A stretch of DNA of 64,000 bases, taken from contig OZ281496.1 in the NCBI GenBank assembly GCA_965637545.1, positions 24,862,001-24,926,000 of the forward strand. Direction: 5' to 3'. The notes under the pieces are model-generated. The model made no database searches. It saw nothing but the letters and a program-made list of their open reading frames with translations, and was not told where the DNA came from. The DNA comes from Phallusia mammillata (taxonomy: Eukaryota). This document shows, piece by piece, positions 11,701 to 61,600 of the stretch; position 1 is the first letter of the stretch, and each line of letters opens with the position of its first letter. The translations under genes and the position numbers were made by a program.

Positions 11701-14700
11701 TTAGGGGAATTTTAACCTCCGTGATGTGTAGTTTTTTATGATATGGTTGGACAATTTTATGTAACCAAATCCGTTACGTGGGTAAATATTCATGTTACGT
11801 TATTCGTTTCAAATTACTAAGTAACGATTTTTTCAACTGAAGTGAGTGTGATTTTGGGTTTAGTTCTTGCTTTATGCCGTTTACGAATTACATAGGTCTT
11901 CAAAACCGTACTTACGTTGGACTGATTTTTCCTCGGAAGTAGTGCTAATTGCTATTGTCGCTGTGTTGGCTATGGCCAGTGAAGCACTGGTTGCGGCAGG
12001 AGCTTGAATGGTCGTTGGTACCATAGTTGTTAGTGGTTCCACAGTGGTTGTTACCAGTTCAGAGCCTGTTGAATGACTGGTTATTGTTTGTGTCGCTTCA
12101 TTCGTCGAAGTTGGTGCAGATATTGAAACTAGTTCAGTGCTTGAAACTGGTTCTGTGTTTGTTGCCGGTTGTGTGTTTGTAGATTGTGCCTTAGTAGTTT
12201 TTGCTTCTTCAGTGAATGTAACTGTTGTGGTATTTGACATCATTTCAGTACCTGTAGATGGTGTGATGGTTGTCACCAGTTCTGTGATTACAAAATGCTT
12301 TAAGTTTGAAAATGAATATTTGTGTCGGAAATGGTCGTTTCTATTTAAATTGTTAAACTATTCAAATACAACGCCGATTTTTTCCTTGTTTCTGCATAAC
12401 TGTTTTATTAAAACAATGATTTAAAGTCAGTTATGATGGTGTATAAAAGCAAAGCAAAGTTGTTTCTACCCCCAAAAGTCAGACGTCACCATCAGTTTGA
12501 TTTTCTACACCGCACGCGTTTTAACAAACAGTTTACTACTGAAAAAGGAAAAAAAATAAACGCTAGTTTACCTGCACCAGCCGTTTGTGCTGTGGCATAC
12601 TCAGTTGTCTTTGTGGTCACTTCTTCGTTTACTTGTGTCGTTGTACCTGCAGTTTGTATTGTGGTTAGGTTAACGGCCTGTATTACCGCATAACATATTG
12701 TGTTAGAATAAAATTATTGAATTATTTTCACCTCAAGGGAATTGTTTTTGTTTAACCATAAATAAAGCAATGTTGGTTGAGGTTTTCTGTTTAATTATAT
12801 ATATTTTATTGTTTTTTGAAGACAACAAACTTTAAACTGGCGGTTTTCCCCCGCTATAAACGTAACATGGATGGACAGAATAGACATATTTCAACTTTAG
12901 TTACATTTTATATTAACCCGTCGGTTTACCAATAGTTGCTGTGTATTTGGTTTGCAAGTTGGTTGATACAGCTCTTTTCTTGTCCGTTCGTGTTATCTGT
13001 AATACGAATCCCCAGACACGCTTTACTAGGATGGCCACGTCGTAAGTGTGTGTATGTGTCCCTATGATCTCAACATCGATGTTGTCTATCGGGTAACTTA
13101 AACAGGCCTCGAACTCCACGTTGACCTGTATTTCTGGGTCAGCTGTGGTGGATATGTTTTGATATCCTTCTAGCACGCTGACTAAAAAAATAGAAAAGTA
13201 CGTTGCCAGTATTCAACAGTATTGATTTTTTCCTGTCGAAAATGTTTACAAATAACAACATTCATTTACAGCTTAGTTAGAAATTGTTCGGCATTCTAAG
13301 TTACTTGTACACTGAAAACTTGTTTCTCGCATTGCTAATTTATTTCCATAAAACATAATTACCAAATTTTAAACAACACACACGATTGCTTACTATTGCT
13401 TCGCCTTTCACACACTAGGCCCTTGCTTTTTCCACAGCCTTCTGTAAACCATTGGCCATTGTTTAGTACGACGCAATTTTTATCAGCAGCAGTGCTGTTC
13501 GATTCCGATTTGCCAAATCGTGACTCGCTTGGCAACAATGGAGTTCCGTCTATCCACGTAAAGTTGCTGAAAGTTTCCGTTAAATCGAAAAGTCCAATCC
13601 AAAGTTCCACGTGAGTATCTGTTGGTGTTGTTTCAGTTATATTTTGAAACATTAGCAGCATGAGCTCAAAACGAATTTTTGACATAATCTGTATTCAGTA
13701 ATTCTTGTAATAGTTGTAATGGCAACATTTTCTTATAAAAGTTGTATCAAAGTTAAATCAACATTGCTCAATTTCGCACCTTTCGTATTAACCAGGTTAT
13801 TTATGAAGTTTGATGTATAGTTGCTTTTCACCATTGCAAGTGTCGCATTGAATCGCTGGCATTCGTTTTGAGCCTCTTCGAACTCGAAGCTTGCCGTCCC
13901 ATGTATGAAGTATTCGGTCGGTCCGCACCCGTACCACTTATCTTCTGCAAAAATACATTTTTTACATTTCCAATACCTTCGGTTTGCGCCTTTCAATTCC
14001 ATGTTATCAGTTTACAAATTTTTAAATCCAGTTAACCTTTGCTACCATTTTTTTTGTTTACGGTACATTTTTATAAAATTTGGTTTGAAAAGTTTCGAAA
14101 TCACATTTAGTGCAATTAGCAGTTGAAACTCTAATGAACCTGTAAATTGTGCTTACCGACATATGGTGCTGAAGTGGTGGTCACCAGTTTATACCTTGCG
14201 GAGGTTGACACTAGCTCAGTGGTTGTTTCTCCCAGGGTTGTTGCTGTTTTAGCGTTTGTTGGTGTTGAGGTGCTTTTCACCAGTTTAGTGGTTGTTTCTG
14301 GTGCCGTGGTTGTCTGAGGTTCAGTGGTTGTTTCCAGTTCAATTGTTGTATCTGGTACCGTTTTCGTGGTCTGTTCAGTGATTGAAACTGATGCTGTGGT
14401 TGTATCTAGTTCAATGGTTGTTGCTGGCACCGTGGTTGGCACTAGTTTATTAGTTGTATCTGGTACTGTTTTCGTCGCCTGTTCATTGCTTGTGGCTGGT
14501 GCGGTGGTTGTTGTTTCAGGAGTTGTATCGGGTAATGTGGTTGTCACAACATCAACGCTTGTCGCTGGTACTATGGTTGTCACTATTTTAGTGGTTGCAT
14601 CTGGTTCTGCGGTTGTCAACAGTCCAACACTTGTCGCTGATGCCATGGTTGTCACCATTTCAGTGGTTGGAACTGGTTCTGCGGTTGTCACTAGTTCAAC

Positions 14701-17700
14701 GCTTGTCACTGGTGCTGTAGTTGTTAATATTTTAGTGGTTATATCTGGTTCTGTGGTTGTCACCAGTCCAACGCTTGTCACTGGTGCTGTAGTTGTTAAT
14801 ATTTCAGTGGTTGTATCGGGAACTGTGGTTGTCACCAGTTCAACGCTTGTCGCTGGTGTTGTGGTTGTAACAAGTTTGGTATTTGCAAACTCCGTGGAAG
14901 TTGGAAACACTCTCGTTGTTTCCGATACCGTCGTTACGTAATCTGTTGTCCTGTCCGCGGTCGTTTCTGCGCAAATGACTTGTATTATAATATTTTTTTT
15001 TCAATAGTGGTACTAGACATTTCTCTAAAACTGTTATGTTTCCTGCAGCTGCTAAATACAGTATTTCCTTCAATTTGCTTTTTAATATTAAAAATGTTTT
15101 TGTAGTATTTCAATTAAAAAAAAATCATGTATGCAACATGTATTTGTGGAAAAATAAAATTTAGTTACCTGCATGTGTCGCTGGTCGTGTTGAGGCACCG
15201 GTGGTTTGTTTTGTGGTTACTTGGGTAGTTTCATGTGGTGTTGTGTCGGTATTTTGTTTTGTCGTTGGTTGCGTAGTTGGTGCTACCATATCACCTGTTT
15301 TAAAATGTAGTATTTTTCTTTATATACACTCAGACGTAAATTTTACGTTTTTTTGTTTTGTTTTGGAAGTCGTAAATCGATTTACTGCCATAAAAAAAAC
15401 ACCACGAGAGAACTGTCTTTATGGAATTATTAAGATTTTTTTATTTTTCGATATGTAATAGTAGTAATTTGATTTTTTAAATGGACTTACTTAGATAGGC
15501 TTTCCATTTAATCTGTAACATTGTGGAGAACCCTGGTTCGTCGTCAGTTCTAGTCAAGTTTAATGCGAATCCCCAAACATGCTTTGCCACAATGTCCAAA
15601 CTATAAGTGTAATTGGTGTCCATTTGAACCTCAACTTGTATGTCGCCAATAGCATAACTTAGACAGGCCTCATACTCCACATTGACTTCTATGGAGCGGT
15701 TAGCACTGCCGGAAATGCGCTGACATCCTTCCAGTACGCTGACTTAATACAGTAGAAAGTTTCGTTAATTGTCTTTTTGTCCAAAACAAATGTGCAACTT
15801 ATACGTTCTTAACCATATGGCTTCAACGATAGTGCAACTGACGCTGTTTTAAATGTCTTTAATTTATTACCTTTGTTATACCCTGAAAACTTGTTTACGT
15901 ATGTATAAATGGTTTATTCTCATTAAAGTTGCTGCTTACTCAATACTTAACGTTTAACATTACTTACTATTGCTCGGCCGTTCACACACCAGGCCTCTGG
16001 TAAACTTGCAGTGTCTTGAAAGCCAACCTTCCGGCTTAAGCAGCAAACATAACTCTTTCGTATCATTATGGAGCCAGTTTCCGAAGAATCGTGACTCGCT
16101 GGGAAGCAGAGGACTTCCGTCTATCCACATAAAACTATTTCCTATTCCAGTTGGGTCTATAAGCCCAATCCACATGCCGCTGGAAACATCTGATGAAGAA
16201 AACGGATAAACTGTATTAATTCAATTTAAGTCTATTACCAGTTTGCCAATTATGTTTTTACGCCAGATTTCTTGATGAATAAGAAACCCGACCTAGTTCC
16301 CATAATTTCTGCTCTTACCTTCAACCACAGTTAGGTTTTTTAAGAATTGTGATGTGTAGCTGCTTTTTATCACTGCAAGGGTTGCATTGAATTTTGCGCA
16401 TTGGTTTCGCGCCTGGTAGAAGTCGAAACCCTTGTGTGTGTATATTAGGTATTCGGTTGGTCCACATCCATACCACTTATCTTCTGCAAAAGAATGCACC
16501 AATTAAACCAACTTGTTGCCGTAACCAAAACTGAAACTAGCTAGGTTATATGGGTTGTGTATATTTTTGACCTCTGCATAAATTGCCTATGTTATAGTAA
16601 ACTGAAGCTTTACACTTACAACCAGGAAGATTCCTGTATAAGCTCAGTTTTATGATTGTCTATGTTGTTTCAAAAGATAATGATTTCGGTAACGTGTTTT
16701 TTTATATATAAAGGATAATCCCATGAACGAAAGCAGTAACAGTTTATGATGGACACACAAAATTCTCGTATGCACAACAGACACTAATGTGAAGTTGTTT
16801 TTAGGACTTTTTTCTCTAAGTGGGATATTTTAGCGACTGAGCAGATTTTGTTGGTAAAACTGTCTGTTACCCTTGCAAGTGTTTGTAAACAATTTTATTC
16901 TAAAACGGACTTTGTTGTAGCTGTTATATAAATCCACCCGGCCTATCAAATGCGACATATCGAAATCAATCACATTTTGTCCGTATGTCTAATGCAGTGG
17001 TTCTCAAACTTTTTTGTTGTCGGGACCAAATGGTAGTTTTTTAAGTGTGTAGGGAGCCGCAAAAAAACGAAACATTGAGAAAATCACTAAACATTATGAC
17101 TTTGAAAGCTAAAATACCAATGTTTGGTGGTTTTCTGAGGTCTGGTGCGAGCCGCAAAATAAGTAGTTTGGAGCCGTATGCGGCCCCGAAATCCGAGTTT
17201 GAGAACCACTGGTGTAATGGCTGATGTCATGAAAGAATATGTGTTCATCTCAGATGGTGTAACTTTTTAACGTTTTGTTAAATCAACTTTTTTGACTTTC
17301 ATGGGATAGGATTTTCAAGTTGTTACAGTTAAGATCACAATTATTTGCCTTTTTGTGTAACAAATGTTAATTAATTCATGTGAAACGTTTTTTTCACGTT
17401 TCCACAAACAATGTCGTTATCAGTATGGATTTTGTACTGAAAACAAGTTGAAATTTTCATCGAAAGTTGAGGCTTTTTGTTCATTAAATGATAAATTGGA
17501 TAGAGATAACCCAATTGGGCTTCTAAATTAGATTACACAATTAGAGTCTTACCAATGGGAGGGTTTGTCGCCAAGGCCATGCTTGTTACTGGTGGTGTAG
17601 TGGTTTCCAGTGATGCGGTGGATGCTACAAGTGAGGTTGTTGCTTTTGCGGTGGTTGCAATTGGCATTGTGCTTATTGCTTGTGCAGTGGTAACCGCTGG

Positions 17701-20700
17701 TGTTGAGAGGGTCGTTAATGCTAGCAGAAAAAAGCTTAAATTGTTTTCAATTTACAAATTACTTACAGATAAAAACTTACAGTTTGATTGGAACTACTAC
17801 AACTGATTGCAAAAAGCTTGTGTGTTATGTTAGTTGCATATAGTATATCGATTACCTACAACTTACTGAATATCCTCTTCCACTTAAGTACCAGTTTTGT
17901 TGGGAAGTCCAATCGGTCGTCAGTGCGCGTTATGTTCAATTCAAAACCCCAAAAATGCGTAGCTACGACTGTTAGGTCGTACGTAAAAGTGTGATCATAA
18001 GAAATTGTCACATTTATGTCGTATGGCATGTTGGTTTGACAGGTCTCAAAAGCCACGTATGTTGTTACTTTTCGGTCGGCTGTAGCTGTTATCCCTGTGC
18101 ATCCACGCAAGACGGTAGCTGCATATAAGAATCAAGAATATCTTGAGGTTTCAAAACAACTAAAATGGCTTACATTCTTGACATAACAACTGCAAAACAA
18201 GCGGTCGTATAATTTTGTTTTAAATTACTCACTGTTGCGTTGTCTTTGGCACACATAACTTTTCAAGTGAGTACATCTGTTTGACTGCCATTGGGCCGTT
18301 TCGAATAAAAATATAACACAGTCTCTTGATGCTCCATTGTTGTTGAGGGGATTTCCACCCTCAAACCGCCATTCGCTGGTTATCAGCGGACTTCCATCAA
18401 CCCACATAAAGTTTTCAGCTGTACCAGTTACATCTTCCAAGCCGATCCAAGCACTGGAGTAACCTTCGGTTAAAAAATGAAAAATATCTTTTACTAATAT
18501 GCGCTTTGGTGTATTACAAAGCCCAATCGACTTCAAGGGGAAGGGGAGTTTTAGTGGGTACTTATGACCCAAAAAATTAACAACATTTTGTTCAAGTTTG
18601 TAATAAAATGTATCTTTTTTGTTAAAAATATTTAGAACTAACTTTTTAGCCAGGTCAAGGAATCATTTATGATACTCAAAATATACAAAACACGGATATT
18701 ACTAAACTGCAAAACTTCTACGAAATAGTTATGAAGACCTTTTACCTAAATGGGTAAAGATGTATTGTATAAACTTTGATGTGTAGTCGTTTCTTATTGT
18801 AGCAAGCGTTCCACCAAATGTCTCGCACTTAAGGCGAGCTTCGTCGTACGACAAGCCTGGTTGATTCTGTACTAGATACTCGGTCAGGCCACATGGGTAC
18901 CACTTTTCCTCTGCGTTAAAATGAAGTAATCTTGTATTTGAAACTGGATTTGTTGTTTCAGAAAACATTTTTTTCATTTCTTTACCTGATATGCGTGGTA
19001 TCATAGAAGTATTGGTTGGCGTTTGAGTTTGGGTTGTTGTGGGTGGTGTAATTATCGCTGGTATTGTTGTTTCTGTTGTTGTTGCTGGTGCAGTCGTTTC
19101 CGCTGGTTTTGTGGTAACCGCTGGTGTACTGATGGCTTCGAATGCTGAGGAAAAGAAAACTGATTAAATGCACAGTTATAAGGGGTGATTCGTGACAATA
19201 TAATAAATCAACCTAGCCTCTACTTGTCGTTTGTGTTTATTTGGATTAGTTATTCTTTGTAAATAAGACTGTACAATGCTACTATTAACTGGTACTTACT
19301 AAACGTTCTTGTCCACTTGATTAGCAAGCTAGTTGGGAAATCCGATCGATGGTCGGTTCGCGTCAGGTTTATTTCGAAACCCCAGTCATACGTAGCTACG
19401 ACCGCCCAATCGTAAGCAAAATTACTGTGGTAGGAAATTGTCACATTAATGCCATACGGGTCGTCACTTGTACAACTCTGAAATTCAACTTCGACTGTTG
19501 TTGTTTGGTCAGCGGTAGTTGTTATGTTTGCACATCCATGCGAAACGCTAGCTGTAGAAAAAAGAGAAAATTTACAAGACGATAGAGTTTAAAAACAAGT
19601 ATAAATGTTCGGTTGTAATTTTTGTAAATTTTATAAATGTTCGGTTGTAAAAAAAAAATTAAGTAATTTTTATTTCACAATATATGCTTTTTCGGGGGCT
19701 TTGTTAGGTTACTTACTTTGAATTTGTCGTTGGCACACAAAACCTCTTGGAAAATCGCATCGTCGTACAAGCCATCCATATTCATTTGAATGCAAAACAC
19801 AGTCTTCCTCCTTTCCGTTAGCATTCGTCGGTTCGTCTCCTTCAAACTTTGACTCGATTGGCAGCAATAGACCACCATCAATCCATTTGAAGTTTTGAGT
19901 GTTACCAGATGCCGATTTTAATCCAATCCAAATATTTTTGTCAAATTCGTCTTTAAATAATAGTACAACGTATTACTTCATGGTTATTACGTTAGGATGC
20001 AGCTTTGGTGATGATTTCAGTAATGAGTACATGTACATTGTTGTTGAACTTTTAGTCATAGAATCATCCAAATGTTTTTCTCTTACTAAGTCAGGATAGT
20101 TGACACTAGAAGAACTATAAGTATGCGGCATGTATAGTTGAAGCTAAAACGTAAGTTATGATAGGAAAAAAACACTTGATTTGCACATTTGTGATGATAT
20201 ATAATTTTACGACTACAGCCGCTGCAATTGCCTATTTGTTGTACCGTTCTAAATGAAGATTAAATGGATTATTATAAAGGTTACGGTTACAGAGCTGATT
20301 CTGGAACACACTAGTTGTGATTTCTTCAAGTTCGATTACGGTTCAAACAAATTCCATTTTGTTTTTGTTTTGAGCTACTCTTGCACTTATGTGCCCTGTG
20401 TAAAGGTTGTGTCTAATTCACTATCTATCAAAAAGTAGACCACCCGGAAAGACCACTGTCGTGAGTTCGAATCCCACTGCAGGCTAGTTTTTTCTAGCTT
20501 ACGCATTGCCACATGGTCATGCTTGGTGGCCGCCTATTTCGGAATAACGCCTAAAATGGGGCTGGAGTACTGTGGTTTGTATATGAGTGTGCCGTGGTCG
20601 CTGGTGTACATATAGATACTTCACGGCTGATCCCAGTTATTAATTTATTTATGTACATCTTAACTGAATTATAAGATGCTGTACAGTACCATCAAGGCCT

Positions 20701-23700
20701 TGGATGTAGTTTATAAATTCGGACGTGTAGTTTTTCTTCAGAATTGCAAGGGTTGCGTTGAATGTCTCGCACTCAACCCGAGCTTCGTTGAAATTAAAGT
20801 TATGCTCATTATGCACCAAATACTCTTGTAAACCGCACTGGTACCACTTATCGTCTGCAATTAAAAGAGTGTATTATTCGATTGAATGTCACTGGTACAA
20901 AAATATTTTTTGTTTATTTTGAACCCCAACAAAAGTTCGATGTTGTTGTTATGACAGAACAAACCAGATATTTACCAACAATTGGTGGTGCAGCCGTCAT
21001 TGCTGGAGTTATGCCTAAAAAATTAAGCTAAGTTTGTTTGCTGTCTATTCTATGTGAAACAAACCTTATTTGCAAAACAATTCTTATCTTTAAAAACGCG
21101 TGAAAATACTGTAGTATCCAGTTTGAAAAAACGAAATTGAGTATTTAGTGTCTTTTTTACCCCAACATAATTATATTCAATGATAAATCATATTTTTTAT
21201 CAAACGTACCTGATATATTTAATCTCTGACAAATAAAGCCTCTCGGATGAAAGCAACCTCTAGAAAGCAATCGGCCATTTTGAGATAATGCTCCACAATT
21301 TTTCGCTTCTTCGTTTGTGTTTAATGGTTCCGGAGATACAAAACCTAGTTCGCTTTCTGATAATGGAGTTCCATCTAACCAGGTGAAGTTGGTTGTCGTT
21401 CCTGTGTTGTCTTGCAAACCGATCCATGGATGTTGAAATCGTTTTGCTGTTGGTTCAAGAGCATTTTGTATCATAAATACCATCAATGCAGCAATGGTTT
21501 TAGACTTTGGATTAGATATTTCGTGAAAGGTTGTTTTGTATTTTGAAAGTTGGATGGTTTGAAGAAAGCCATCACACTGCTTTTATTACAGTTTTGTCAA
21601 AGACTTTTATAATTAACAAACAAACAAACTTTTGGTCAAGTTTAAACCAACGTGTTTAACTGATGTATAGATGCGTAGCTTTTTTCCCCTGCTTTGAACA
21701 TAACATTTGTTGGAACTTTCTGCTAAGTTTTGAAATATTAAACATGTAAGTAATTTTGGTGTGCAATTTCAACAAGCGAAATTTTTGCACTTACTTCTAA
21801 AATCAGATGAAGTAAGAAAATTTGCGGTTTCATTGTTTCGTACGATGGCCAGAGATGCATTGTATGCTTCACACATCTTTCGAGCTTCGTCAAAGGAGTA
21901 GTTCGTGTTTTCATTTATCAAAAACTCGTAGTGACCAAATTGATACCATTTTTCAACTGCAAAAATATTCTACCACTTTATTCCATTCTAACTAATTTAT
22001 TTTATTTTACACAAACAATCTGATTTTATACATTATTATTTTAAAATAATTAGTATATTTTGTTTGTATTGGTTCATTATTCTATTCAAATATGATTGCA
22101 AATTGTAAAAAGTCTGTATTTAACGCAAAAGGTAATAATTCGTAATTTTTCGACATGTTGCAAGCTTATATAAAAGCAGACTTAGTTGTTGTTCAATACT
22201 TACCAAACGGCGGAGGCGGCTGAAAACCTACAACATAAAAATGACATTAATTAAAAGAAAACTAAATAAACTTCATTTTTAAATTTATGATAAAGCAACG
22301 AATGCTCGACACTTAAGTGTTGTGTACAAATTGTTTACAGCGTGCTTTCTTTGCATATGATACTGGCAACGTGGTATAAAAGCATAGAATATTCTGTCAA
22401 ATACCAGTATCGTAACCTTTCAAGCGATAGCGATTGTTGGCCAGTTCCACTCAGGTGTAGGAATAAGAAATAACTCTTACTGTAATACGCCGCCCATTTG
22501 ATCTGCGCATTGGACGGTGTTCCTGAAATGCTGTCCATTCTTATTACTAGTACATCAAATCCCCAATAGTAGATGTTCATTAACAGAGCTTCATATGTGT
22601 AACCGCCTTCAGCGATGACAAACACATCAACTGATTGCGGAGTATCAATGACGCATGTGCGAAAACGCACTGACACTATTGTAGTGTACTCCGTGCTGTT
22701 ATAGTCCTGACAACCACTGATGATATCTTTGGACACAAATGAATGTATTTAGGGCAGTTTTAAATGCAAAAAAAGTGATGCCCTACTTTACATTTTACTA
22801 TAAGCAATTTTTTTTGCTTACTTTGCTTCTTCTTTGGCAGTGTAAAATGTAGTGAATATGCACCGCTGTTATATAGTTGTGTACATGGTAAAAGTTACTG
22901 TTTTGGGCCTTTTTTAATTTGCGAAGTAAGCGATTTTCAGCATTTGATACTGGGATAAAATCATAGCGTTCTTGATTAGTTTGTTTACGCCCAAAATTGG
23001 CACTAATGTATACGAGTCATCGTTCAAATCGAAATAATACAACAATTTGAAATAGTAGAACAAAGGCCAGAGCAAACAAACCTGTCTGGTTCGTAGCCCT
23101 TTCGCAAATAAAACCTCTTCGCTGGAAGCATTGTCTAGAACTTAATTGTCCGCTATGGGACATCAGCACACAATCCACGTATGGATGATCTAAGTTAATT
23201 GGTTCCGGGGGCACAAACTTTGGTTCGCTTTCTTGAAACGAGCTTCCGTCAGGCCAGAAAAATTCGTTTGAATCTTCACCTTGGTTCCGCAGTCCTATCC
23301 ACGCGTTTACAGATGTTTCTGTGTAACATCAGATGTTGCTTGTCACATTGAATTGCAGTAAAACGTAAATTGCAATCTATGTTCATAATATCGTTTAACT
23401 CATCACTTTAAAATATATAACATGATCTCATTTATAAATATGTAAACTTGTTACTTGGTATCTCAAATATATCACAAATGTCTCGAGGACTATTTTGCGG
23501 GAAAAAAATCCTTTACATAATCAAACTAACAATATGCTTAATATGTTACTTGTGATACCTGCCAAAATGCCGAGCGAAGTAAGAAACATCACCGTTTCGT
23601 TTGTTCGTAGGAAAGCCAATGTGCCACCAAAACCTTCACAAACACTCTCAGCTTCTTCATACTTGTGATCATGGCCGGTATGAATTAGGAACTCGTTCCT

Positions 23701-23900
23701 GCCGCATTGATTCCATACTTCCACTGCATTAAAAACATCAGTTACTATAACGTAAGTTGCAGAAAATAAGGCGCATTTTTGCAGTATGGAGAAATTTTTC
23801 TATTCTGTCACAAATTGTTAATGCCAGGTTACATCCATCCCGAATTTCATTGATCTTTGCCCCAAATAGACCTTAACATCCGGGTAAATTTCTCCAAATA

Positions 23901-23937
<37 letters not shown>

Positions 23938-47300: not shown

Positions 47301-50300
47301 ATTTTGGTGGAGAACTTCCAGCAACCAATCTACAGCCGTTCGGAATCCATTTTCCGCTGGCTTGGTAAACGCTACACTGTGTCCTGGTTACGACGTCCTG
47401 TTGATTTACCCAGAAACACTTCGTTTTGTGGCAATGTAGATTCAAAGTTAATTTTGATGTTTGCTCCAAACATTTTGTTGAATTATGACACTTTAATTAC
47501 ATAGTAGTGATTTACCTTCAACGATCCGTTTGTTAATGCGACATTTCCTTGCTTTTCGCTTGTGTTCGTGAAAGTTAAGTCAATTGGTGCTTTGATTGCT
47601 CCGCCTTTGTGGCCTTTCACATTCACAGTGATTACCTAAAACGCAATTTAAATGTTTAATGATATTAACCAAATCACTTTCCAAATGTAGTTTATTGTAT
47701 AACTGTTAGTTGATCTTTCCTCCAGTTCATGATGAACACTGTTAAATGGGTTTGATGCGTTATGAACTATAGGCCTATTATACATGGATCTTAGATGCTG
47801 TCTTACCATGGGTGCTTTTTCAGCTGCAGGAAAGAGTGTTGAGCTTGAATGAAAGATAAAACTCGCTCGGACGCTTGTGTTGCCGCCTGTTGAGCCCACG
47901 GCGTCCAATACCGACCCAGGAATAGTTGCAGTAACCACATTTGTTCCTGCTATTGCGCTGTTGTTTCCAGGGGCGAATGAAACCGAAGCATACTTGTTTT
48001 GTGCAGTCTTCTTGGTTTGGCTCACCTAACAATTAATCGCATGTATATTTTGCGACACTTCGGCCATTATAAACATTTCAGCTTCAGGTTTTCATGCACC
48101 AATTGGTAAAAATATGTGTGTGTGTTCTCAAGTGTTGGTCGTAGCAATCTTGTTGTACCTGTATTGTTGTTTGGTTTGTTGATATTGTTAGGACAGTAGT
48201 GTTTGCAGGGAGCGTTACTCGGTTGGTGAATGTCTCCAAGCTTTTCGTAAGAGAAGCTTTTTGACTTGCAGCGGTCCTGAAAAAACGCATATCATGAAGG
48301 GAAATTCTGTACAACGAACCTTCAAACTTTATTGTTTTACTTACTTGCTGTTAGTGGTATTTTGGAATGTAGCCGCAACCTGGTTGGTGGTTAAAAGAAC
48401 GTCGTACATCGTGTTAACGGTAATCTTTAAAGAAAAGTAAGCATGGTTTTCTTCACGTTCTCATTTACGGCTACACCAAAATGTTTCACAACGAGCTTTC
48501 GCAAGATTTTGTCCAACCTGAACTTTTTGAGGATCCGTGGCACTTAGCTCATTGAGAGCAGCCGTGGCGTTAGCAACATCTGCCTTATTGAGTTTTGCTG
48601 GACTGCTTGTCAGCAGTTTCAGCGTTGCAACTGCCGTGGTTACACTTGACGTTGTAGCTTGTGACACATTGATCTGCAACAAGCACAACTTACGGTGACT
48701 TTAATGTCGGGTATAAATTGATTTGTAATTTTAGTTTTCATTGGATAAGGAAAGATTATAAACTTATTTTAGCACTGACGCTTGCAAATGTCGTTTTAAA
48801 TGTAGACACTTCAAAGCAACGTACACACACTAAACCAAACGCAGAACATGCAACCCATGATCATGATTAGAATACACCATAATTAGAAACGTTCAGACGG
48901 GATTGGAAAAAGAAGTTTATGCTGACGCAAGCATTCTGATATGAAATGGACCCCAACAGTGTATAAAGGATAAACATGGGCACTTTGTATCCTTAGTGGC
49001 AAGTTCATTTACCGTTGTTGACAAGCTTCCTAATGTTGTTCCGCAGCTGATTACAATCGGTGTGCCGAAGTACCCAGAGTTTGCATCTGTTGCGTTTTGT
49101 AAACAGGGTGCTGATGCCTCAGGATTTCCTGTATATTTGCAAGTTGTTATGTAAGTTTCAACACTGTGTTGTACTAAAGTATTTTTAGGGATATAACACC
49201 CACTTTAACAATTCTTTGCAACACTACTTGTTTGGTAAGTTTGTCACTCACCTGTTGAAGAACATGTTTGTAGTGAAACTGCAGTTTGTCCAACCTCAGC
49301 TTGAGCGAAATTGAAGGTTTTGTTCGACGCCGATACAACTTTTGACTTGCAAAACACTGTAATACGTATGTATGGTTTTTGATAATTGCTTGCAAGTAAC
49401 ATATGAAATTTCAATAGGTTTATTCCCAAAACGACAGCAGCAACTGTTTTTGTGCACTACTAGTAAGGCCTATAATGTATGAGCCTCCATCACGGTTTAC
49501 AATACCGAAACGAGGCCTTTGCTGAAGACTGATTAACGCATCCTAATTTTCTAATTACAAAACTGAAACACACTGTTCGACATTCTACATTGGTAGGGAT
49601 TAATTAATTAGTCACTGTATTTTTTACCTGCGGGTGCTGTAGCTATTGGTGTGCTTGCAACAGTTGTCGGTAAGGCTGTAGAAGCTAAAACAAACAATTG
49701 TAATAGAATCTGTTGCTAATGACACATTGACGTTTCCTAACGGTATTGGAAAGCTTGAATAATCTACGTTTAAGAATTCTGTGTGGGTATATATGAGTAT
49801 GAGTATATTTGAATTAAGATTCAATCGCACAATATCGTGCAATGATAAAACGTGATAATTTTGAACATAGATTTGTCTAAAGCTTTGGACTATTAAAAAG
49901 CTTATCTGTGTTGTTCTTACCTGCTGCTGTAGTTGTTGGTGACGCTGTAGTAACTAAACACAAACAACGCTTTAATTGTGTTACGTACAAACTTAGATAT
50001 GCATGTATTGGTCAAAACGTTTTCGTCACATTTAGAAAATGTTAAGTTCGCTTTCTATTTTACCTACCGTTAACTACTTGATAGAAAAGGCTTAGTTGAT
50101 TGCTCCAGCCTGAATTTGTGTCCGTCCTTGTTATAATCGCTACAAACTTTGTGTCACAAATGCTTGTAACTGTTGAAGTAAAGCTTTGGTTCGCGTTGCC
50201 GGTGACCACAATCATAACATTAGCAGTTGTATTGATAGGTGAGCTGAATACAACCTCAACAGTTTTATTCTGTAATGCGCTTGCAGCGACTGTGACCGTT

Positions 50301-52973
50301 CCTGACAGCAAAGCTAGAACGAACAAAACATTATTAGGCAATTGTGTGGGGTACAAAGCTACTTAAATAATATAGTGATCTGAATTCTGCGCCTTGTTAA
50401 GAAAAAAATGGTTATGTTAGATTGGTAACTGGAAGTTTCTGTTTGCTATGCTGTTGAACGTGCGTTTTTATTTGTATTTAAGGTAGTTTGATACAAACAC
50501 GTACAGTGGAAAAGTCCTGTTGCTAATGACTATTGACATTTCCTATTCCTATTGTAACGTATTTTTAGTATACTTTTCGATAATTTGCGTAAGTACCTAG
50601 CACGGGCAATAGCTAAGATTTAATTAGCTGTGGGTAATAATTAGTTGTTGGTAACGATCTGGTAACTAAACCCATACAAAACAAATAGTTATGCACTGTA
50701 TTTTGGCATAGGTCAAATACATAGGAGTGGCAAAACGATAGAAAACATTGCGGGTGCAAACTTACATAAGCGTTTAATGGTCTAACTCAGTCGTCCCCAA
50801 CCTGGGGTTCGCGGATCCCTAAGGGGTCCGTGAGATGGTCTCAGGGTGTCCGTGGAGGCAAGCATTTGTAGTAGCATTAACAACATTACAATATTTTTTA
50901 AATTCCCAAACCGTTTTTACAAACCTGAACATGTGCAAACCGTTTTTACAAACCTGCACGAGTGCAAACTGTTTATCAAACCCTTGGATCAGAAAAACTT
51001 GTGATTATTGCCTCCATTGCGAAACCACAACACACATTAACAATAGAACTTATTGTGCTTTGTTTCGTTCGGGGTTCGCGGAACTATAAAATTTATAAAG
51101 GGGGCCGTGGCTACAAAAAGGTTGGGAACCACTAGTCTAACTAAACGTTTCAGTTAAATTTAGAATTTGTCATTACCGTAGTAAATAATTACAACTTTAA
51201 CAATATCGAAACAAAGCTTTTACTTGAGGCACGTTAACGCATCCTAAATTTGTAATTGAATTTTATATATTTGTTATCAACCACCGCCTTTCTTACCTGC
51301 TGCAGTTGTAGCTTTGCGGGGGCTTGTTACTTTTGTCGGTGATGCTGTAGTAGCTAAAACTAACAATGTCAATAAATGAGACATGTATTTCTGTCGTTTA
51401 GGAAAGTTAGAATCCAATAGAGAAGATATTTGATTTTGATTACTCTTACTTTTATGTACTTATATTTTGCAAACGCTACGTTATGATGTGGACTTCATGT
51501 TTTGGAATGTGCTGTCGTCTTACTTTTAATGTACTGAAAATGCTCGGTCAATGGAATACTCGTACCAACTTACGAGAAATTGGACTCCAGTTGAGCACTT
51601 CATTTGTAATTGAAAAATGGTATAGCACCTTTCTACTATCAAGTAGGTGAGGTTTTTTGTCAATCACTGTCTTTCTTACCTGCTGCTGTAGTAGCTATTG
51701 GGGTGCTCGCTACTGTTGTCGGTGATGCTGTAGTAGCTAAAATAAACAATGTCAATAAATTAGACATGTATTGTTTAGTCGTTTAGAAAAGTTAAAATAA
51801 AGAGATTAGAATTTGTTTACTTCCACTTTTAATACTTATATCTTGAAAACGCTACGTTATAATAGAGACTCCATGTTTTAGAATGTGCTGTCGTCATACT
51901 TTTTAATGCACTGAAAATGCTCTGTCGGTGGAATACTGTGGTACCAACTTACGGTAAATTGAACTCCAGTTGAGCACTACATTTGTATTTGAAAAATAGT
52001 AACACACCTTTCTACTATCAAGTAGGTGTGGATTTTTGTCAATCACTCTCTTTCTTACCTGCTGCTGTAGTAGCTTTGGGGGTGCTTGCTACTGTTGTCG
52101 GTGATGCTGTAGTTGCTAAAAAAAACAATGTCAATAAATGAGACATCTATTTCTGTCGTTTAGGAAAGTTAAAATAAATCCAATAAAAAAGATTTTAACT
52201 TGTTTACTTTCAATTTCATTTACTTATATCTTGAAAACGCTACGTTGCAATAAAGACGTCATGTTTTGTAATGTGCTGTCGTCTTACTTTTTATTATATT
52301 GAAAATGCTCTGTCAATGGAATACTGGTACCAACTTACCGTAAATTGGACTCCAGTTAAGCACTACACTACTAGGGGTGTCCACCTGTGTGTCAGTTCTT
52401 TTGATTGTGGCTTTAAATCCCCAGCTGTAGATTTTCGTCATGGTAAATGAAAAACTAAAGTTGGACTGCACCGTAAATGTCCCTTGAATATCGATTGGCG
52501 TTGGGACAGAGCAGTTGTAAAATGTGATGGCCACATTTTTGCTCGTTGCTGCCGGCTGAGCCCCAGAGTAAACGATATAACTTGACGGTTGACCTGTAAA
52601 TAAACAACAAATGACAAACCATACAGTTGTGTTTTCAAGAATTTAGTTTAATATGTATTAATACACATTTTCAATAAGTTTGCTATGGTGATCGTACGAG
52701 TTTTTTACCTCGTATGCTTACAATATCAACAGGAAGCTATACGCCAATAGCAAAGCGGATGGCTTCACTCATTTTAGGCCGGCTTTGAAATGCGTTCTTT
52801 GCGCTGCTCGTAGCAGCGACAGTCAGTTCACTCACGCGTTTGGATTTATCACTTTTTAAGGCAAAGATATTTGCATCAAGCATCACACACAAATTAAACA
52901 TACATCAATTGGTTGATATACCTGATGCAACGACTGCAAACATTGTAACTTCAAGTAGTATTATGAGCACCAT
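44380..52973 (-). CDS. Adhesion GPCR 'D', 22 exons, about 926 aa: SP, X, 3 Thr linkers, X, 2 linkers, HormR-like, GAIN/GPS, 7TM (B-like head, E-like core)
   Basis: Exons: 52973-52922 (MVLIILLEVTMFAVVAS), X 52593-52339, 52115-52059, 51736-51680, 51353-51297, X 50313-50068, 49953-49921, 49684-49628, 49356-49252, 49128-49013, 48673-48518, 48424-48345, 48276-48159, 48025-47807, 47635-47516, GPS 47397-47263, 7TM 47202-47093, 46006-45799, 45295-45172, 45072-44912, 44769-44599, 44523-44380. Confidence 0.92.
45488..45784. mobile_element. hAT MITE, 297 bp, same family as 43659-43867 in opposite orientation, in an intron of D
   Basis: TIR CAGTGGTTCTCAACC; perfect 8-bp TSD GTCTATAC; paralog E has a single GTCTATAC at 56895-56902 (empty site). 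Confidence 0.93.
46057..46880. mobile_element. Non-autonomous TIR element, about 824 bp, in an intron of D and absent from E
   Basis: Left end CAGGGGCGTATCCAG, degenerate right end TTGGATACGCCAAGC, G and C runs subterminally; CTTGTGC duplicated on both sides; E intron (about 57155-57175) is contiguous across the site. Confidence 0.8.
50788..51134. mobile_element. hAT MITE, 347 bp, in an intron of D
   Basis: Ends CAGTCGTCCCCAACC / GGTTGGGAACCACTA; perfect 8-bp TSD GTCTAACT. Confidence 0.88.
51297..52339 (-). repeat. Three tandem units of about 380 bp, each with a 57-nt Thr-rich linker exon; two also carry an orphan 3' fragment of the X exon
   Basis: Linker exons end at 52059, 51680 and 51297 (period 379/383); fragments GTGCTCAACTGGAGT.CAATTT..C|gtaag near 51575-51600 and 51950-51980. 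Confidence 0.88.
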
Positions 52974-53982
52974 CGCCTTGTTTGTTTGTTTTCTCTTGCA
53001 GCAAGTCGCTGTAACAGTTTACATGAAGCTTAAACTGCAAAGGAAGTTCGTTACTTTAAACAAAACTGGTTAATCATAACGTTTATCCTAGAACAGGTAT
53101 TATCATCAGGTATGATATGAACTGCTGCCGCTCTTTTTCAAGTTGCTTTCTCTCAACAAACGCGGCTTCCAAACTTTTGTAGTAACGGCTCTAGTTCATT
53201 ATTGTGTCTGCAAAACACCACGTTTTAACTGGAACTTTTTATGCACAAAGTTGTGTCGTTCGTCGAAACAATGCGGGAGAAAGAATTAGAAACAACTAAC
53301 ATCCAAAATTAATTAGTGATTTCTACGTGTATGTTTTAAATGCTTTAGGGAACATAAACATGCTTTTAAAGACACTTTAAGACTATCTTACGGACTCCTC
53401 ATGGGTTTGCGAACTCTAGTTTGGGCATACTGCTGTCTACGCGTATCGCATCACAGATAACTAAACCAAAATAAAACAATATCAACTACATCCCTTTCAT
53501 GAACTGAAAAAAACTAACCCGTCTACTGTTATGGCTACTCGTAACAAGAGCTGTGTTGTTAACCAGTTAATCAGAAACTGGTATGAATAAACGCCCTAAC
53601 CCAAGCTTTATCGTAGGCAAGTTGAACATCCGTGTTGCCCATACGACGACGTATCCACAGTGGAAGTAGGTGTTTTTCTGTGCGTCATGTTAAGCGGAAC
53701 AAAAACACGCGAACTTATGCATAACTAAAAACTAAATTCTTAAACGGTTATCGATTATTAGATGTTCAAGCACAGTAGTTATTACTACTTGTAAGTAACA
53801 CACTGCAAAAAAGCCATTTTTAAAGTTGTTCACTTTGTGTATTATTGCACTCATACTGTGTATTAGAATTGGAAGCCTTCTTATTCTGTGTCCTTAATTG
53901 TTTTAAAAATCAATTACCGAGCTGAGTAGATGTTGCTCGACTTAACCTTAATGTCCAAGACCTAAAACGTCTCGTTTTAGAC

Positions 53983-58600: not shown

Positions 58601-61600
58601 GTGTGTGTTTGTGTGTCTTTAAAATCTGGTTGTAGTATTCTTTTTGTACCTGTATTGTTGTTTGGTTTGTTGATATTGTTAGGACAGTTGTGTTTGCAGG
58701 CAACGTTACTCGGTTAGTGAATGTCTCCAAGCTTTTGGTAAGAGAAGCTTTTTGACTTGCAGCGGTCCTAAATAAAATACAACTCGTAAAGGAAAAATTC
58801 TACTTTAAATCTATAAACTTCCATTTTTACTTACTTGCTGTTAGTGGTATTTTGGAATGTAGCAGCAACCTGGTTGGTGGTTAAAAGAACGTCGTACATC
58901 GTGTTAACGGTAATCTTTAAAGAAAAGTATCGAAAGTATAGTTTTTACAGCTGCAAAGAAAATTTTCGTTTTACAAGATGTCTAACCTGTACTTTCTGAG
59001 GATCCGTGACACTTAGCTCATTGAGAGCAGCTGTGGCATTTGCAACATCTGCCATATTGAGTTTTGCTGGACTGCTTGTCAGCAGTTTCAGAGTTGCTAC
59101 GGTGGTGGTTACACTTGATGTTGTAGCTTGTGACACATTGATCTGCATTGAACATCACTTTTATTAACTTTACTGCAAGTCAAAATTATTAATGTGTGAT
59201 TTCAATTTTCATTGGATAAGGAAATTGATCATAAAGTTTGTCAGAAAACGAATTTATTCTAGTACTGACGGTCGCAAGTGACGGTTTTAAATACAGACAT
59301 TTCAAAACAACGCACGCACGTAATCCAAACACAGAACTTACAACGCATTTTGTAATGAGAATATAGATGAACTTTGTTATGGACTTTCGACGTTCAGACG
59401 GGATTGAGAATAAAACTGTAAACTGGCGCAAATAGTTGAAAATGATATGGACCCCAACAATGTATAAGGATATGCACTTTGTATCTTTAGTGCAAGTGCA
59501 TTTACCGTTGTTGACAAGCTTCCTAATGTTGTTCCGCAGCTGATTATAATCGGTGTGCCGAAGTACGCAAAGTTTGCATCTGTTGCGTTTTGTAAACAGG
59601 GTACTGATGCCTCAGGATTTCCTGTATAAATGCAGGTTATAAAACATTCAATAGTGCGTTGTACTTTTTGTAATTAAATAAAGAACTTTTGGCGTACATA
59701 TAGTACCGTATGCGTTTGCAACCAGTGTTGTTTCTTATTTTGTCACTTACCTGTTGAAGAACATGTTTCTTGTGAAACTGCGGTTTTTCCCACCTCGACT
59801 TGAGCGAAATTGAAGGTTTTGTTGGACGCAGAAACAACTTTTGCGTTGCAAAACACTGCAACACACATGCATGCTTTTGATTAGTGCACATCACAAGTAG
59901 TAGTAACACTCATAATATGGAGTATTATGTATTAGCCATCATCATAGTAAGAAACAAGTGTTTACCCTTTATAACAGTTGGTGTGTTAGGTTTGGGACTT
60001 GTTTTTGACAGGGCTGTCGTCGTTGCTAAGGGGGTCGTCGTCGCCAGGGGTTTCGTCGTTGCTAAGGGGGTTGTCGTCACCAGCGGTGTTGTCGTTACTA
60101 AGGGTGTCGTCGTAGCTAAGGGGTTGGTGGTCACCAGGGGTGTCGTCGTTGCTAAGGGTGTCGTCGTGGCTAAGGGCGTAGTTGTTGCCAGGGGGGTGGT
60201 TGTAGCAGGCGGGTAGTCTGTTATTGTATGCTTGTTTTATGTTTTACCTGATTTAAACACTAGCAGTCTATTCATGTCACTTACAAAGTTGGGCTGTGTA
60301 TTGGATCGAAAGCTGATTGGGAAATGTTGCTTTTTTGTCTAGCCTGTTTATCGTGGTCTTGAAACCCCATGCTTCAGCCAGTGTAGCGGTAGCGATAAAC
60401 TTGTATCCAACAGCAGTCGCCGTGACTGTGATCGATAGAGGGGCGGGGTTTTGGCATACTTCAAATGGGATCGATGCATTCACTTGTGGCTTTGTCCGGT
60501 TTCCATATAATACCGTGTAGGTTCCGCTTAAGGTTGCTGAAAACGACACGATTAGCAATTAATAACAATACAAGACAAGTTTGTTTGTAAAACTAATCCA
60601 ACAACCACAAGGAATACAATTTGGTTTGGCTTTTGTACGTCTTGTTAAAAGTATGCAAAACAAAAAAAATCTGCATTCTTCATCGAACAACGGTATCATT
60701 TCTTCATCGAACCACGGTAAACGCTAAATAGGAAGTTTACTTTACATGACGCATGGCACATCGCTGAAGGATGGGGATTTTTCATGTTGAGTGTTAATTA
60801 GTTGTACGTGGGGGTGGCGCGTTTCCGTAGTTTTGTGTTTGCTGCTCAAATTATTTTTTGCAAACCTTTTTAATGCATGGGTCAGCTTTTGTGTATAATT
60901 ATACACTATAGTATAAATTACTCTCACTATAGTTTTGTAATGTTAAAATCGCCACATGATATGAAATATTTATTAAATGAAAAACCCAAATTAACGTTTT
61001 ATGGTCTTGTTACATTTGCATGAAAGTGGACTAAGAGACTATTATGTCTGTACATAACGCAAGTGTTCCCCAATACTATCCTAAGTTAGGTCGCAAAAAC
61101 ATGTTTATGTATGCAAAACAGTTTAAGCTGCGTAATAAAGTTTTTTTTTTTCAAAACTGACCCAGCATTGAATTGTCTTGATATTGTTTAGTTTCTTCAA
61201 AAACACTGTAGCAAATCTATGGTCTACATGCTACTGTTGGTATAGTGTTTGGTATAATTTAACAACGTGGTCCATCAAAACTCCAGAATCGTTTTTATTT
61301 AAACTTACTTGGCCTCCTTCTCTGACACAAACTGGGCTTTAATTGTTGGCAATCCCTTGCTGCCCATGACGAATATTTTCCCACAGCAACGCAGTCAGGT
61401 TTTGCTTTGTTGTTGTTTGTAATCTGACCGCCCGCAAAATTTTTTTCGCTTTCCAGCAACGGCGTGCCATCAATCCAAGTAAAGTTTGTTGCAGTGCCGC
61501 CTTTGTCCTGCAAGCCAATCCACGTTGGCACTGCATAAAATCAACTTAAGTTATAACTATTTGAAACCCAATTTAAGATGGACCGTTTTGGCCGAAATGT

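What the first reader, a model, noticed from the sequence alone, without database searches (positions are those of the whole stretch)
12930..60536. Unassigned 82-98 aa single-exon domain 'X' (H-type-lectin-like) repeated 12 times
Seen: homologous exons at 25154-24861, 24585-24313, 22726-22481, 19551-19300, 18118-17867, 15742-15491, 13181-12930 (A), 35088-34834, 34193-33948 (B), 52593-52339, 50313-50068 (D), 60536-60285 (E). Consensus: G...V.V.F..C...P..I.V.I......TY...V.....WGF...I.R.D....FP..L...W. Most A copies have a G-C...F-x-x-C cysteine pair; several copies keep a single Cys. Inference: the V.F...P.V....V..GF.V.....W pattern resembles H-type lectin (PF09458) and phage tail-fibre C-terminal beta-sandwiches, which are trimeric, so the domain may bind GalNAc-type sugars and cluster receptors. 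I know of no H-type lectin domain described in an adhesion GPCR.
Basis: partly seen in the sequence, partly recalled or inferred. Interest (0 to 1): 0.9.

Follow-up and report, generated by a model that had tools for sequence, protein, structure and literature searches.

The report
H-type lectin domains on adhesion GPCRs
Twelve single-exon copies of an unannotated ~83-residue domain in four neighbouring sea-squirt adhesion GPCR genes are a divergent branch of the H-type lectin family (snail agglutinin, slime-mould discoidin, phage tail-fibre tips), a sugar-binding module I found no report of in this receptor class.

Summary
All 12 exons lie at the stated coordinates on the minus strand, are AG/GT-bounded and phase 1-1. 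A profile built only from paralogs outside the window recovers exactly these 12 and nothing else. Spliced RNA contigs reproduce the boundaries they cover for the three exons they reach.

No copy reaches Pfam PF09458. However, AlphaFold models (pLDDT 89 and 86) match Helix pomatia agglutinin, discoidin I/II, coral SLL-2 and phage or pyocin fibre tips. A profile of the domain finds 337 proteins; most of those I scanned carry PF09458 on or next to the matched residues. hhalign against such domains gives 99% probability (E 9e-18).

The genome is the ascidian Phallusia mammillata. It holds at least 138 such exons. The domain is the first mature module of receptors A, B and D, and alternates with C-type lectin domains in A.

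Not supported: GalNAc specificity, because the canonical pocket tryptophan is replaced within a family-specific R-T-D…G-W loop. Trimerisation is also unsupported; the complex prediction gave no answer.

The same module was noted by this scan 20 kb away (s1-405476). Verdict: a new variant of a known kind, of moderate interest.

The parts
24861..25154 (-). X copy A1, the first mature domain of receptor A. Divergent, 97 aa, no RxD motif.
   Evidence: Open phase 1-1 exon. Independent HMM iE 1e-4. AF2 pLDDT 85.6, top Foldseek hit HPA 2ccv.
24313..24585 (-). X copy A2 (90 aa, divergent, no RxD motif)
   Evidence: Independent HMM iE 1.3e-11.
22481..22726 (-). X copy A3
   Evidence: Independent HMM iE 2e-15; PF09458-derived HMM 1e-4.
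19300..19551 (-). X copy A4, the copy that was modelled
   Evidence: RNA joint 19144|19300 and contig end at 19551. AF2 pLDDT 89.3. Fold matches.
17867..18118 (-). X copy A5
   Evidence: RNA joints 17720|17867 and 18118|18233..
15491..15742 (-). X copy A6
   Evidence: RNA joint 15742|15968..
12930..13181 (-). X copy A7
34834..35088 (-). X copy B1, the first mature domain of receptor B
   Evidence: Candidate signal-peptide exon just upstream.
33948..34193 (-). X copy B2, closest to canonical H_lectin (ITRTDTNSGW)
   Evidence: HMM of PF09458-positive domains iE 7e-15.
52339..52593 (-). X copy D1 (85% aa identity to B1)
50068..50313 (-). X copy D2 (96% aa identity to B2)
60285..60536 (-). X copy E1, which follows a C-type lectin domain in receptor E
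   Evidence: Lectin_C at 61298-61540.
25238..25304 (-). Candidate signal-peptide exon of receptor A (ATG at 25304, phase-1 GT donor)
   Evidence: inferred; no RNA evidence.
35421..35472 (-). Candidate signal-peptide exon of receptor B; its counterpart in D is 52922-52973
   Evidence: The block is conserved between B and D.
18233..18910 (-). One two-exon C-type lectin domain of receptor A (exons 18744-18910 and 18233-18461), lying between X copies A4 and A5
   Evidence: RNA joints. Lectin_C Pfam matches were tested on the equivalent exons at 13362-14011.
15968..16483 (-). Another two-exon C-type lectin domain of receptor A (16319-16483 and 15968-16189)
   Evidence: RNA joints.
7995..8225 (-). 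GPS motif of receptor A
   Evidence: PF01825 27.2 bits. The motif reads C-K-C-Y-R-L|A-S-F-S-M.
5708..7703 (-). 7TM exons of receptor A
   Evidence: PF00002 matches at 7395-7703 and 6341-6574. ORF listing.

Best explanation
[quoted passage not shown] Each copy is encoded by one phase 1-1 exon and has been shuffled and amplified in the ascidian Phallusia mammillata.

In this window it forms the extracellular head of four of five tandem adhesion-GPCR paralogs:
- A: signal peptide, X-X, then (C-type lectin - X) cassettes with interspersed mucin exons, a long mucin stalk, GAIN, 7TM.
- B and D: signal peptide, X-X, GAIN, 7TM.
- E: C-type lectin, X, mucin, GAIN, 7TM.

Shown: the exons are real, spliced and under purifying selection, and both fold and profile-level sequence homology point to H-type lectins.

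Inferred: X is a ligand-recognition module, most likely for glycans. Binding would use the distal loops L1/L3/L5, as in other members of the fold. The family's invariant R-x-D...(G)W motif sits in loop L5, the loop that carries the sugar-contacting aromatic residues in HPA and discoidin. Ligand engagement at the tip of the stalk would then be passed to the GAIN/7TM unit.

The specificity is not that of the canonical GalNAc pocket and is unknown.
For: - Exons and expression.
- Fold: AF2 pLDDT 89.3 and 85.6.
- Foldseek top hits: 4ru5, HPA 2cgy/2ccv/2ce6, HAA 4q56, SLL-2 3wmp, R1 pyocin fibre 6cxb, discoidin II.
- VIA-align over 48,161 chains: 6cxb Z 9.3, 4ru4 8.3, discoidin I residues 158-251 Z 8.2, HPA Z 8.1.
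- ESM Atlas shape search: H_lectin and Gp53-like_C clusters at TM 0.75-0.82. Language-model features: score 0.93 to an H_lectin cluster.
- Sequence: a profile of 43 copies finds 337 proteins at E<=1e-3. Of the 36 hits I scanned, 28 match PF09458 (21 at or above its 24-bit cut-off), usually on or adjacent to the residues the X profile matched, e.g. P0006, P0011, P0005, P0060.
- hhalign of X against 23 such domains: probability 99.0%, E 8.8e-18. An HMM of those domains hits 9 of the 12 window exons directly, B2 and D2 at 1e-14. That same profile reaches HPA in the PDB at E 0.0025.
- Loop mapping: X R64/T65/D66/F71 align to HPA T82/W83/H84/Y89 through. This is loop L5 of the sugar-binding distal loop network (PMC6363177, table 2). 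The discoidin pocket aromatics W235 and Y241 are required for binding (bioRxiv 10.64898/2026.06.18.733164).
- Position: X follows the predicted signal peptide in A, B and D, and each copy carries 1-4 N-glycosylation sequons.
- Receptor context: Lectin_C, GPS and 7tm_2 matches.
- A full-length public protein, P0001 (Phallusia 'CD97 antigen-like'), has X4-mucin-GPS-7TM from a gene about 50 kb away.
- Lectin-type company elsewhere: X plus Fibrinogen_C in Ciona ficolin-like proteins, and X plus LDLa plus Lectin_C in amphioxus.
Against: - No single copy, nor P0001, reaches Pfam PF09458 even at E 10. A six-frame scan of the genome with PF09458 finds nothing.
- The canonical pocket is not conserved. 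The tryptophan position is Thr. By my recollection of the HPA site (Arg63, Asp26), those positions are not kept either.
- The Y89-equivalent aromatic residue is present in only 6 of the 12 window copies.
- The strong conservation of R-x-D...W from bacteria to ascidians could reflect a structural role rather than ligand binding.
- No binding data exist.
- The trimer prediction gave no support.
- The loop mapping rests on profile alignments, not on superposed coordinates.
Confidence: 0.72

Rival explanations
1. X has the H-type lectin fold by descent but no longer binds sugar. It would serve as a rigid spacer, a protein-binding module or an oligomerisation module that spaces and presents the C-type lectin domains and the stalk.
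For: - The canonical pocket Trp is replaced.
- In receptor A, X alternates regularly with C-type lectin domains that could be the real sugar binders.
- The N-terminal copies A1 and A2 lack even the RxD motif.
- In Ciona ficolin-like proteins X sits where ficolins carry their collagen-like trimerising region (the comparison with ficolin architecture is from general knowledge).
Against: - B and D have X-X as their only recognisable module apart from GAIN, so there X must be the ligand-facing part.
- Members of the fold with known function bind glycans through the same loops.
- The R, D and W of loop L5 are typical sugar-contact residues and are the best-conserved surface positions.
Confidence: 0.22
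2. X is an unrelated small beta-sandwich (Ig/FN3/SEA-like or a new fold) that resembles H-type lectins only by convergence.
For: Pairwise identities to solved H-type lectins are only 10-20%. Pfam is silent on every copy.
Against: - Profile-to-sequence hits down to E 1e-24 against proteins that carry PF09458.
- hhalign probability of 99%.
- Shared framework motifs (G in strand 1, V.F, GF, RxD, GW, W.A) with PF09458-positive bacterial domains.
- No Ig, FN3 or SEA structure appears among the top fold matches.
Confidence: 0.03
3. The exons are not functional coding sequence: decayed duplicates, transposon-borne ORFs or chance open frames.
For: The family is highly amplified, including near-identical tandem units nearby. 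RNA depth is low, about 4-6.
Against: - All 12 copies are open with consensus splice sites and matching phase.
- Spliced contigs from four samples join three of them in frame to the neighbouring C-type lectin and mucin exons.
- dN/dS is 0.25-0.33.
- A public transcript-derived protein contains four copies joined to a 7TM domain.
Confidence: 0.03

Closest known systems
H-type lectins (Pfam PF09458): Helix pomatia and Helix aspersa agglutinins, coral SLL-2, C-terminal domain of Dictyostelium discoidin I/II
   Same: Six-stranded beta-sandwich of about 85-100 residues. Same framework motifs (G in strand 1, V.F, GF, W.A). Profile-level homology. Extracellular glycoprotein context in animals.
   Different: X is below the Pfam threshold and has shorter L1 and L3 loops (83 aa against 101 in HPA). 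It has an R-T-D...G-W loop L5 in place of the T-W-H...Y of HPA. It occurs as tandem single-exon modules inside a membrane receptor rather than as a small secreted trimer. Trimer formation and GalNAc binding are not shown.
Phage and tailocin receptor-binding tips (Pfam Gp53-like_C PF21882; R1/R2 pyocin fibre foot; LKA1 gp49, phi297 and AP22 tailspike C-termini)
   Same: These are the best structural matches (Z up to 9.3, TM 0.76). The PF09458-positive hits with the same RxD...GWxQ motif include many domains at the extreme C-terminus of long proteins, the position these domains occupy in fibres and tailspikes.
   Different: Those domains are held in obligate trimers by the fibre shaft and bind LPS or capsule. 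X is in a eukaryotic single-chain receptor.
Lectin-bearing adhesion GPCRs: latrophilin/CIRL (rhamnose-binding lectin domain) and amphioxus adhesion GPCRs with C-type lectin domains (PMC2246102)
   Same: A carbohydrate-recognition-type domain placed distally on a GAIN-7TM receptor. Receptors A and E here also carry C-type lectin domains.
   Different: The lectin family differs. I found no report of an H-type lectin module in this receptor class.
Ascidian 'unclassified' adhesion GPCRs of Ciona (Kamesh et al. 2008, PMC2396169)
   Same: Lineage-specific, tandemly duplicated receptors without vertebrate orthologues. 21 of 24 were reported with 'only the GPS domain' in the N-terminus.
   Different: Here the supposedly empty N-terminus is filled by a domain that Pfam does not see. 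Whether the Ciona receptors carry it was not testable with the tools available.

Membership tests
H-type lectin domain (PF09458 superfamily) | Six-stranded antiparallel beta-sandwich with the HPA/discoidin topology | tested here: met
   AF2 models of A4 (pLDDT 89.3, six strands) and A1 (85.6). HPA, HAA, SLL-2 and discoidin I/II are among the top matches in Foldseek and VIA-align (Z 8.1-8.2), together with phage fibre tips. Atlas clusters H_lectin and Gp53-like_C at TM 0.75-0.82.
H-type lectin domain (PF09458 superfamily) | Match to the Pfam PF09458 model at its gathering score | tested here: not met
   0 of 43 copies at E<=10. P0001 has no H_lectin hit. A six-frame scan of the whole genome gave 0 matches.
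H-type lectin domain (PF09458 superfamily) | Profile-level sequence homology to bona fide PF09458 domains | tested here: met
   The X profile hits proteins that carry PF09458, usually on or next to the matched residues. hhalign A2 vs A3: probability 99.0%, E 8.8e-18. The A3 HMM hits 9 of 12 window exons. The A3 profile reaches HPA at E 0.0025. Caveat: the A3 members were chosen from hits of the X profile.
H-type lectin domain (PF09458 superfamily) | Canonical Gal/GalNAc pocket residues (HPA W83, H84, Y89; discoidin W235, Y241) | tested here: not met
   Through the alignments, W83 corresponds to Thr65, H84 to Asp66 and Y89 to W/F. The aromatic residue is kept in about 31 of 43 family members but in only 6 of the 12 window copies. 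The pocket aromatics are required for discoidin binding.
H-type lectin domain (PF09458 superfamily) | Homotrimer with binding sites at protomer interfaces | tested here: inconclusive
   Complex prediction with three copies scored 0.02 against a mark of 0.32: 'no answer'.
H-type lectin domain (PF09458 superfamily) | Carbohydrate binding | not testable with these tools
   Needs recombinant protein and glycan arrays.
Gp53-like_C (PF21882) phage tail-fibre tip | Match to the Pfam model | tested here: not met
   Only 1 of 43 copies matches, at E 0.016 and below the cut-off. The structural similarity is strong nonetheless.
Adhesion GPCR (the host proteins) | GPS motif followed by a 7tm_2 domain | tested here: met
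   For receptor A: PF01825 at 7995-8225, PF00002 at 7395-7703 and 6341-6574. For receptor E: a GPS match at E 7e-4, 20.5 bits, just under the 22.5-bit cut-off. The same motif is read in all five genes.
Adhesion GPCR (the host proteins) | Autoproteolytic H-L|T/S cleavage triad in the GPS | tested here: not met
   All five read C-x-C-x-[RKIV]-L|A-[SA]-F-S-M, with no His at -2 and Ala at +1. The triad requirement is from general knowledge of GAIN domains.

The most novel reading that the evidence does not exclude
The X heads define an ascidian-specific class of pattern-recognition adhesion GPCRs. In this reading a diversifying H-type-lectin repertoire (at least 138 exons, three sublineages, and arrays of dozens of copies) reads microbial or allogeneic glycans through a new R-x-D...W binding site. 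It would couple recognition directly to G-protein signalling, possibly through lectin-driven clustering of receptors whose GAIN domains are not cleaved.
Probability: 0.2. Interest if true: 0.75.

Novelty: new variant of a known kind. Interest (0 to 1): 0.55.

Why it matters
Adhesion GPCRs are defined by their extracellular adhesive modules, and most remain orphan receptors. Ascidian-specific members were described as having almost empty N-termini (PMC2396169).

This finding shows that, in at least one ascidian, that space is filled by a domain invisible to Pfam but demonstrably of the H-type lectin family. That adds a lectin class to the adhesion-GPCR domain repertoire and gives these orphans a concrete, testable ligand hypothesis: glycans.

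It also extends PF09458 by a large animal subfamily with its own loop L5 motif. An HMM of this subfamily would improve annotation of tunicate and amphioxus proteins, including ficolin-like and 'Notch'-annotated proteins.

Tried and rejected
- Pfam on single copies and on all 43 family members: only chance-level hits.
- Sequence profiles of X against PDB sequences: nothing. The link to HPA appears only through the intermediate PF09458-positive profile.
- PF09458 six-frame scan of the whole genome: no match, and the control genomes were silent too, so it is uninformative.
- Complex prediction, three copies of X: no answer (score 0.02 against a mark of 0.32). This is neither for nor against trimerisation.
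- The look-up of encoding contigs for P0001: not on record.
- The search for homologous proteins with P0001, whole and 7TM region: only itself and a distant nematode latrophilin. The spread of X-bearing GPCRs to other tunicates could therefore not be tested.
- Among the 169 fetched hit proteins, only P0001 has a 7TM region.
- Literature searches for H-type lectin together with adhesion GPCR, GPCR or ascidian: no description of this architecture.
- A paper giving the HPA contact residues by number was not found. Those residues (Asp26, Arg63, Trp83, His84, Tyr89) are from my recollection of Sanchez et al. 2006. The loop boundaries are from PMC6363177.
- Rejected readings: Ig/FN3/SEA fold, chance ORFs and pseudogenes (see rival explanations).


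Full report
**1. The observation**

Translating the 12 intervals from their first base gives stop-ridden frames, because every exon is phase 1-1. Reading from the third base, all 12 are open on the minus strand. Each is preceded by a polypyrimidine tract plus AG and followed by GT(A/R)(A/G)GT-like donors.

They align over about 83 columns with G5, F/Y23, C26, V/I34, G57-F58, R64, D66 and W79 (numbering of copy A4) as the best-kept positions.

To exclude circularity I built an HMM from 31 paralogs taken from elsewhere in the genome and ran it over all six frames of the window. Eleven score between 2e-17 and 6e-11. The most divergent, A1 at 24861-25154, scores 1e-4.

RNA evidence exists. Contigs from four runs of one study are spliced with GT..AG introns at 15742|15968, 17720|17867, 18118|18233 and 19144|19300, and one contig ends at 19551. 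These are the stated boundaries they cover for copies A4, A5 and A6. The contigs join those copies in frame to C-type lectin and mucin exons.

Pairwise dN/dS between copies is 0.25-0.33. The cysteine pattern is as described.

**2. Context**

The window carries five tandem minus-strand adhesion-GPCR paralogs (ORF map; Lectin_C, GPS and 7tm_2 matches).

| Receptor | Span | Layout |
|---|---|---|
| A | about 5708-25304 | predicted signal peptide, X-X, then (two-exon C-type lectin domain - X) cassettes with interspersed Thr-rich mucin exons, a long mucin stalk, GAIN/GPS, 7TM |
| B | about 27313-35472 | signal peptide, X-X, GAIN, 7TM |
| C | about 36760-41000 | no X found |
| D | about 44383-52973 | signal peptide, X-X, GAIN, 7TM |
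| E | about 55655-62122 | signal peptide, C-type lectin domain, X, mucin, GAIN, 7TM |

The signal-peptide exons are predictions. If they are right, X is the most distal mature domain of A, B and D. Each copy carries 1-4 N-glycosylation sequons.

**3. The organism and the size of the family**

The genome (240 Mb) holds at least 138 X exons, with clusters on contigs C3, C5, C8 and C2. These include a run of 2349-bp tandem units at C3:24.98-25.02 Mb.

A public protein, P0001 (1086 aa), is named 'CD97 antigen-like' from Phallusia mammillata. It is 100% identical to an exon of this genome about 50 kb from the window. It reads X-X-X-X, mucin, a GPS-like motif, then hydrophobic segments consistent with a 7TM region. 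The genome is therefore P. mammillata, or something indistinguishable from it: an ascidian.

**4. What the domain is**

Pfam gives nothing for any of 43 copies, and sequence profiles do not reach the PDB.

*Structure.* AlphaFold2 on the 43-sequence alignment gives a confident six-stranded sandwich (pLDDT 89.3).
- Foldseek against the PDB ranks the phi297 and LKA1 tailspike C-termini, HPA (2cgy, 2ccv, 2ce6), Helix aspersa agglutinin, coral SLL-2, the R1 pyocin fibre foot and discoidin II at the top.
- An exhaustive VIA-align run gives R1 pyocin fibre Z 9.3, LKA1 gp49 8.3, discoidin I residues 158-251 8.2 and HPA 8.1. The first rows from outside this fold group score about 6.5 and below.
- ESM Atlas shape search (TM 0.75-0.82) and language-model features (0.93) both point to H_lectin and Gp53-like_C clusters.
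- The most divergent copy, A1, modelled separately (pLDDT 85.6), again has HPA as its best hit.

*Sequence.* A profile of the 43 copies, scored against 1.84 billion representatives, finds 337 proteins at E<=1e-3.
- Of the 36 hits I scanned with Pfam, 28 match PF09458 and 21 reach its 24-bit cut-off.
- The match usually lies on or next to the residues the X profile matched, for example P0006 273-340, P0011 561-624, P0005, P0045 and P0060 607-671.
- Several hits also match Gp53-like_C.
- Twenty-three such domains share the consensus TGFxxNVxRxDxxxGWGQxLxLDWxA, which is recognisably the X motif WGFxxxxxRTDxxxGWxxxxxLxWxA.
- hhalign between the two alignments gives probability 99.0%, E 8.8e-18 over 86 columns.
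- An HMM of the PF09458-positive set hits 9 of the 12 window exons directly, B2 and D2 at 1e-14. The same profile reaches HPA and HAA in the PDB at E 0.0025-0.009.
- In a maximum-likelihood tree the sampled canonical domains nest inside the X family, next to B2/D2 and the array copies. The window copies fall into three sublineages: (A1, A2), (A3-A7, B1/D1, E1) and (B2/D2). Resolution is limited.

X is thus a divergent subfamily of the H-type lectin family. It is not a new fold, and it is not an Ig, FN3 or SEA domain.

**5. How it probably works**

In HPA, discoidin, SLL-2 and the phage or pyocin tips, sugars are bound by the distal loops L1, L3 and L5. In HPA these are G10-L31, Q53-V64 and T82-S90; in discoidin I, L5 is T234-S242 (PMC6363177, table 2). 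The discoidin pocket aromatics W235 and Y241 are needed for glycan binding.

Chaining the alignments gives these correspondences:

| X (copy A4) | HPA |
|---|---|
| R64 | T82 |
| T65 | W83 |
| D66 | H84 |
| F71 (W in most paralogs) | Y89 |
| W79 | W95 |

The hallmark R-T-D...(G)W of X is therefore loop L5, the same loop that lines the sugar site. Its chemistry differs, however. The stacking tryptophan is gone, an Arg/Asp pair is invariant, and the second aromatic residue is kept in about 31 of 43 family members but in only 6 of the 12 window copies. L1 and L3 are much shorter than in HPA and are variable.

My reading is that X is a ligand-recognition head, most likely for a glycan, presented at the tip of a mucin stalk, alone (B, D) or interleaved with C-type lectin domains (A, E). 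Engagement would be transmitted to the GAIN/7TM unit. This step is inferred, not shown.

GalNAc specificity is not supported. Trimerisation is untested in effect, since the complex prediction returned 'no answer'.

The main rival is that sugar binding was lost and X is a spacer, protein-binding or oligomerising module. The regular CTLD-X alternation in A fits this, as does the position of X in Ciona ficolin-like proteins (X followed by Fibrinogen_C).

**6. Comparison and novelty**

C-type lectin and rhamnose-binding lectin domains are known in adhesion GPCRs (PMC2246102; PMC6900090). I found no report of an H-type lectin domain in one.

For Ciona, 21 of 24 lineage-specific adhesion GPCRs were reported to have only a GPS domain in the N-terminus (PMC2396169). 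A Pfam-invisible domain like X is an obvious candidate to fill such N-termini, but I could not test Ciona receptors.

Some related ascidian proteins (Clavelina) are already auto-named 'H-type lectin domain-containing'. The family link is therefore not unknown to databases; what is new is the receptor context and this subfamily.

A neighbouring window of this scan carries a first-reader note of the same module in adhesion GPCRs (s1-405476).

I rate this a new variant of a known kind, of moderate interest.

Noticed in passing
window 7995-8225, 30145-30312, 38463-38684, 47245-47496, 57484-57945 (minus strand): The GPS motifs of all five receptors read C-x-C-x-[RKIV]-L|A-[SA]-F-S-M. The usual His at -2 and the Thr/Ser nucleophile at +1 are missing, so these GAIN domains are probably not autoproteolytically cleaved. 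A Stachel-like A-S-F-S-M-I-V segment is kept.
   Followed up: partly
genome C3:24,981,000-25,017,400 (55-91 kb beyond the window end; loci L016, L019-L026): A very large tandem array of X exons. It includes at least 8 near-identical 2349-bp units, each with about five X exons separated by short introns. The public fragment P0003 comes from it. Whether it ends in a GAIN/7TM unit was not checked.
   Followed up: partly
window 16951-17232: A short stretch inside an intron of receptor A is covered by RNA contigs at 130-800x, against 4-6x for the exons. The contigs have many variants and loose ends running into unrelated sequence, as expected of an abundantly transcribed repeat or transposon fragment.
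   Followed up: no
window 488-3346 (minus strand): A 953-aa intronless ORF with full importin-13/transportin-3 architecture. An uninterrupted ORF of this size, next to intron-rich genes, suggests a retrogene or an unusually compact gene.
   Followed up: no
window 3672-4601 (minus strand): A 310-aa ORF with ZSWIM3_N, DUF5575_N and FAR1 DNA-binding domain matches, typical of a domesticated or resident MULE/FAR1-type transposase fragment.
   Followed up: no
window 33932-35516 versus 50052-53020: The heads of B and D (signal-peptide exon, X1, X2 and their flanks) are 81-94% identical at the DNA level. The rest of the two genes shows almost no DNA similarity.
   Followed up: partly
whole genome: A six-frame scan with 7tm_2 gives at least 401 candidate exons, of which 158 scored matches. 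Many lie in dense clusters on contig C1, indicating a very large expansion of adhesion/secretin-type receptors in this ascidian.
   Followed up: no
proteins P0059 and P0062 (Ciona intestinalis), P0002 (Phallusia), P0034 (Branchiostoma): The same domain occurs in other architectures: in front of Fibrinogen_C in Ciona 'ficolin-like' proteins, with EGF repeats in a Phallusia protein named 'Notch', and with LDLa plus a C-type lectin domain in amphioxus. In none of the four did Pfam report H_lectin.
   Followed up: partly
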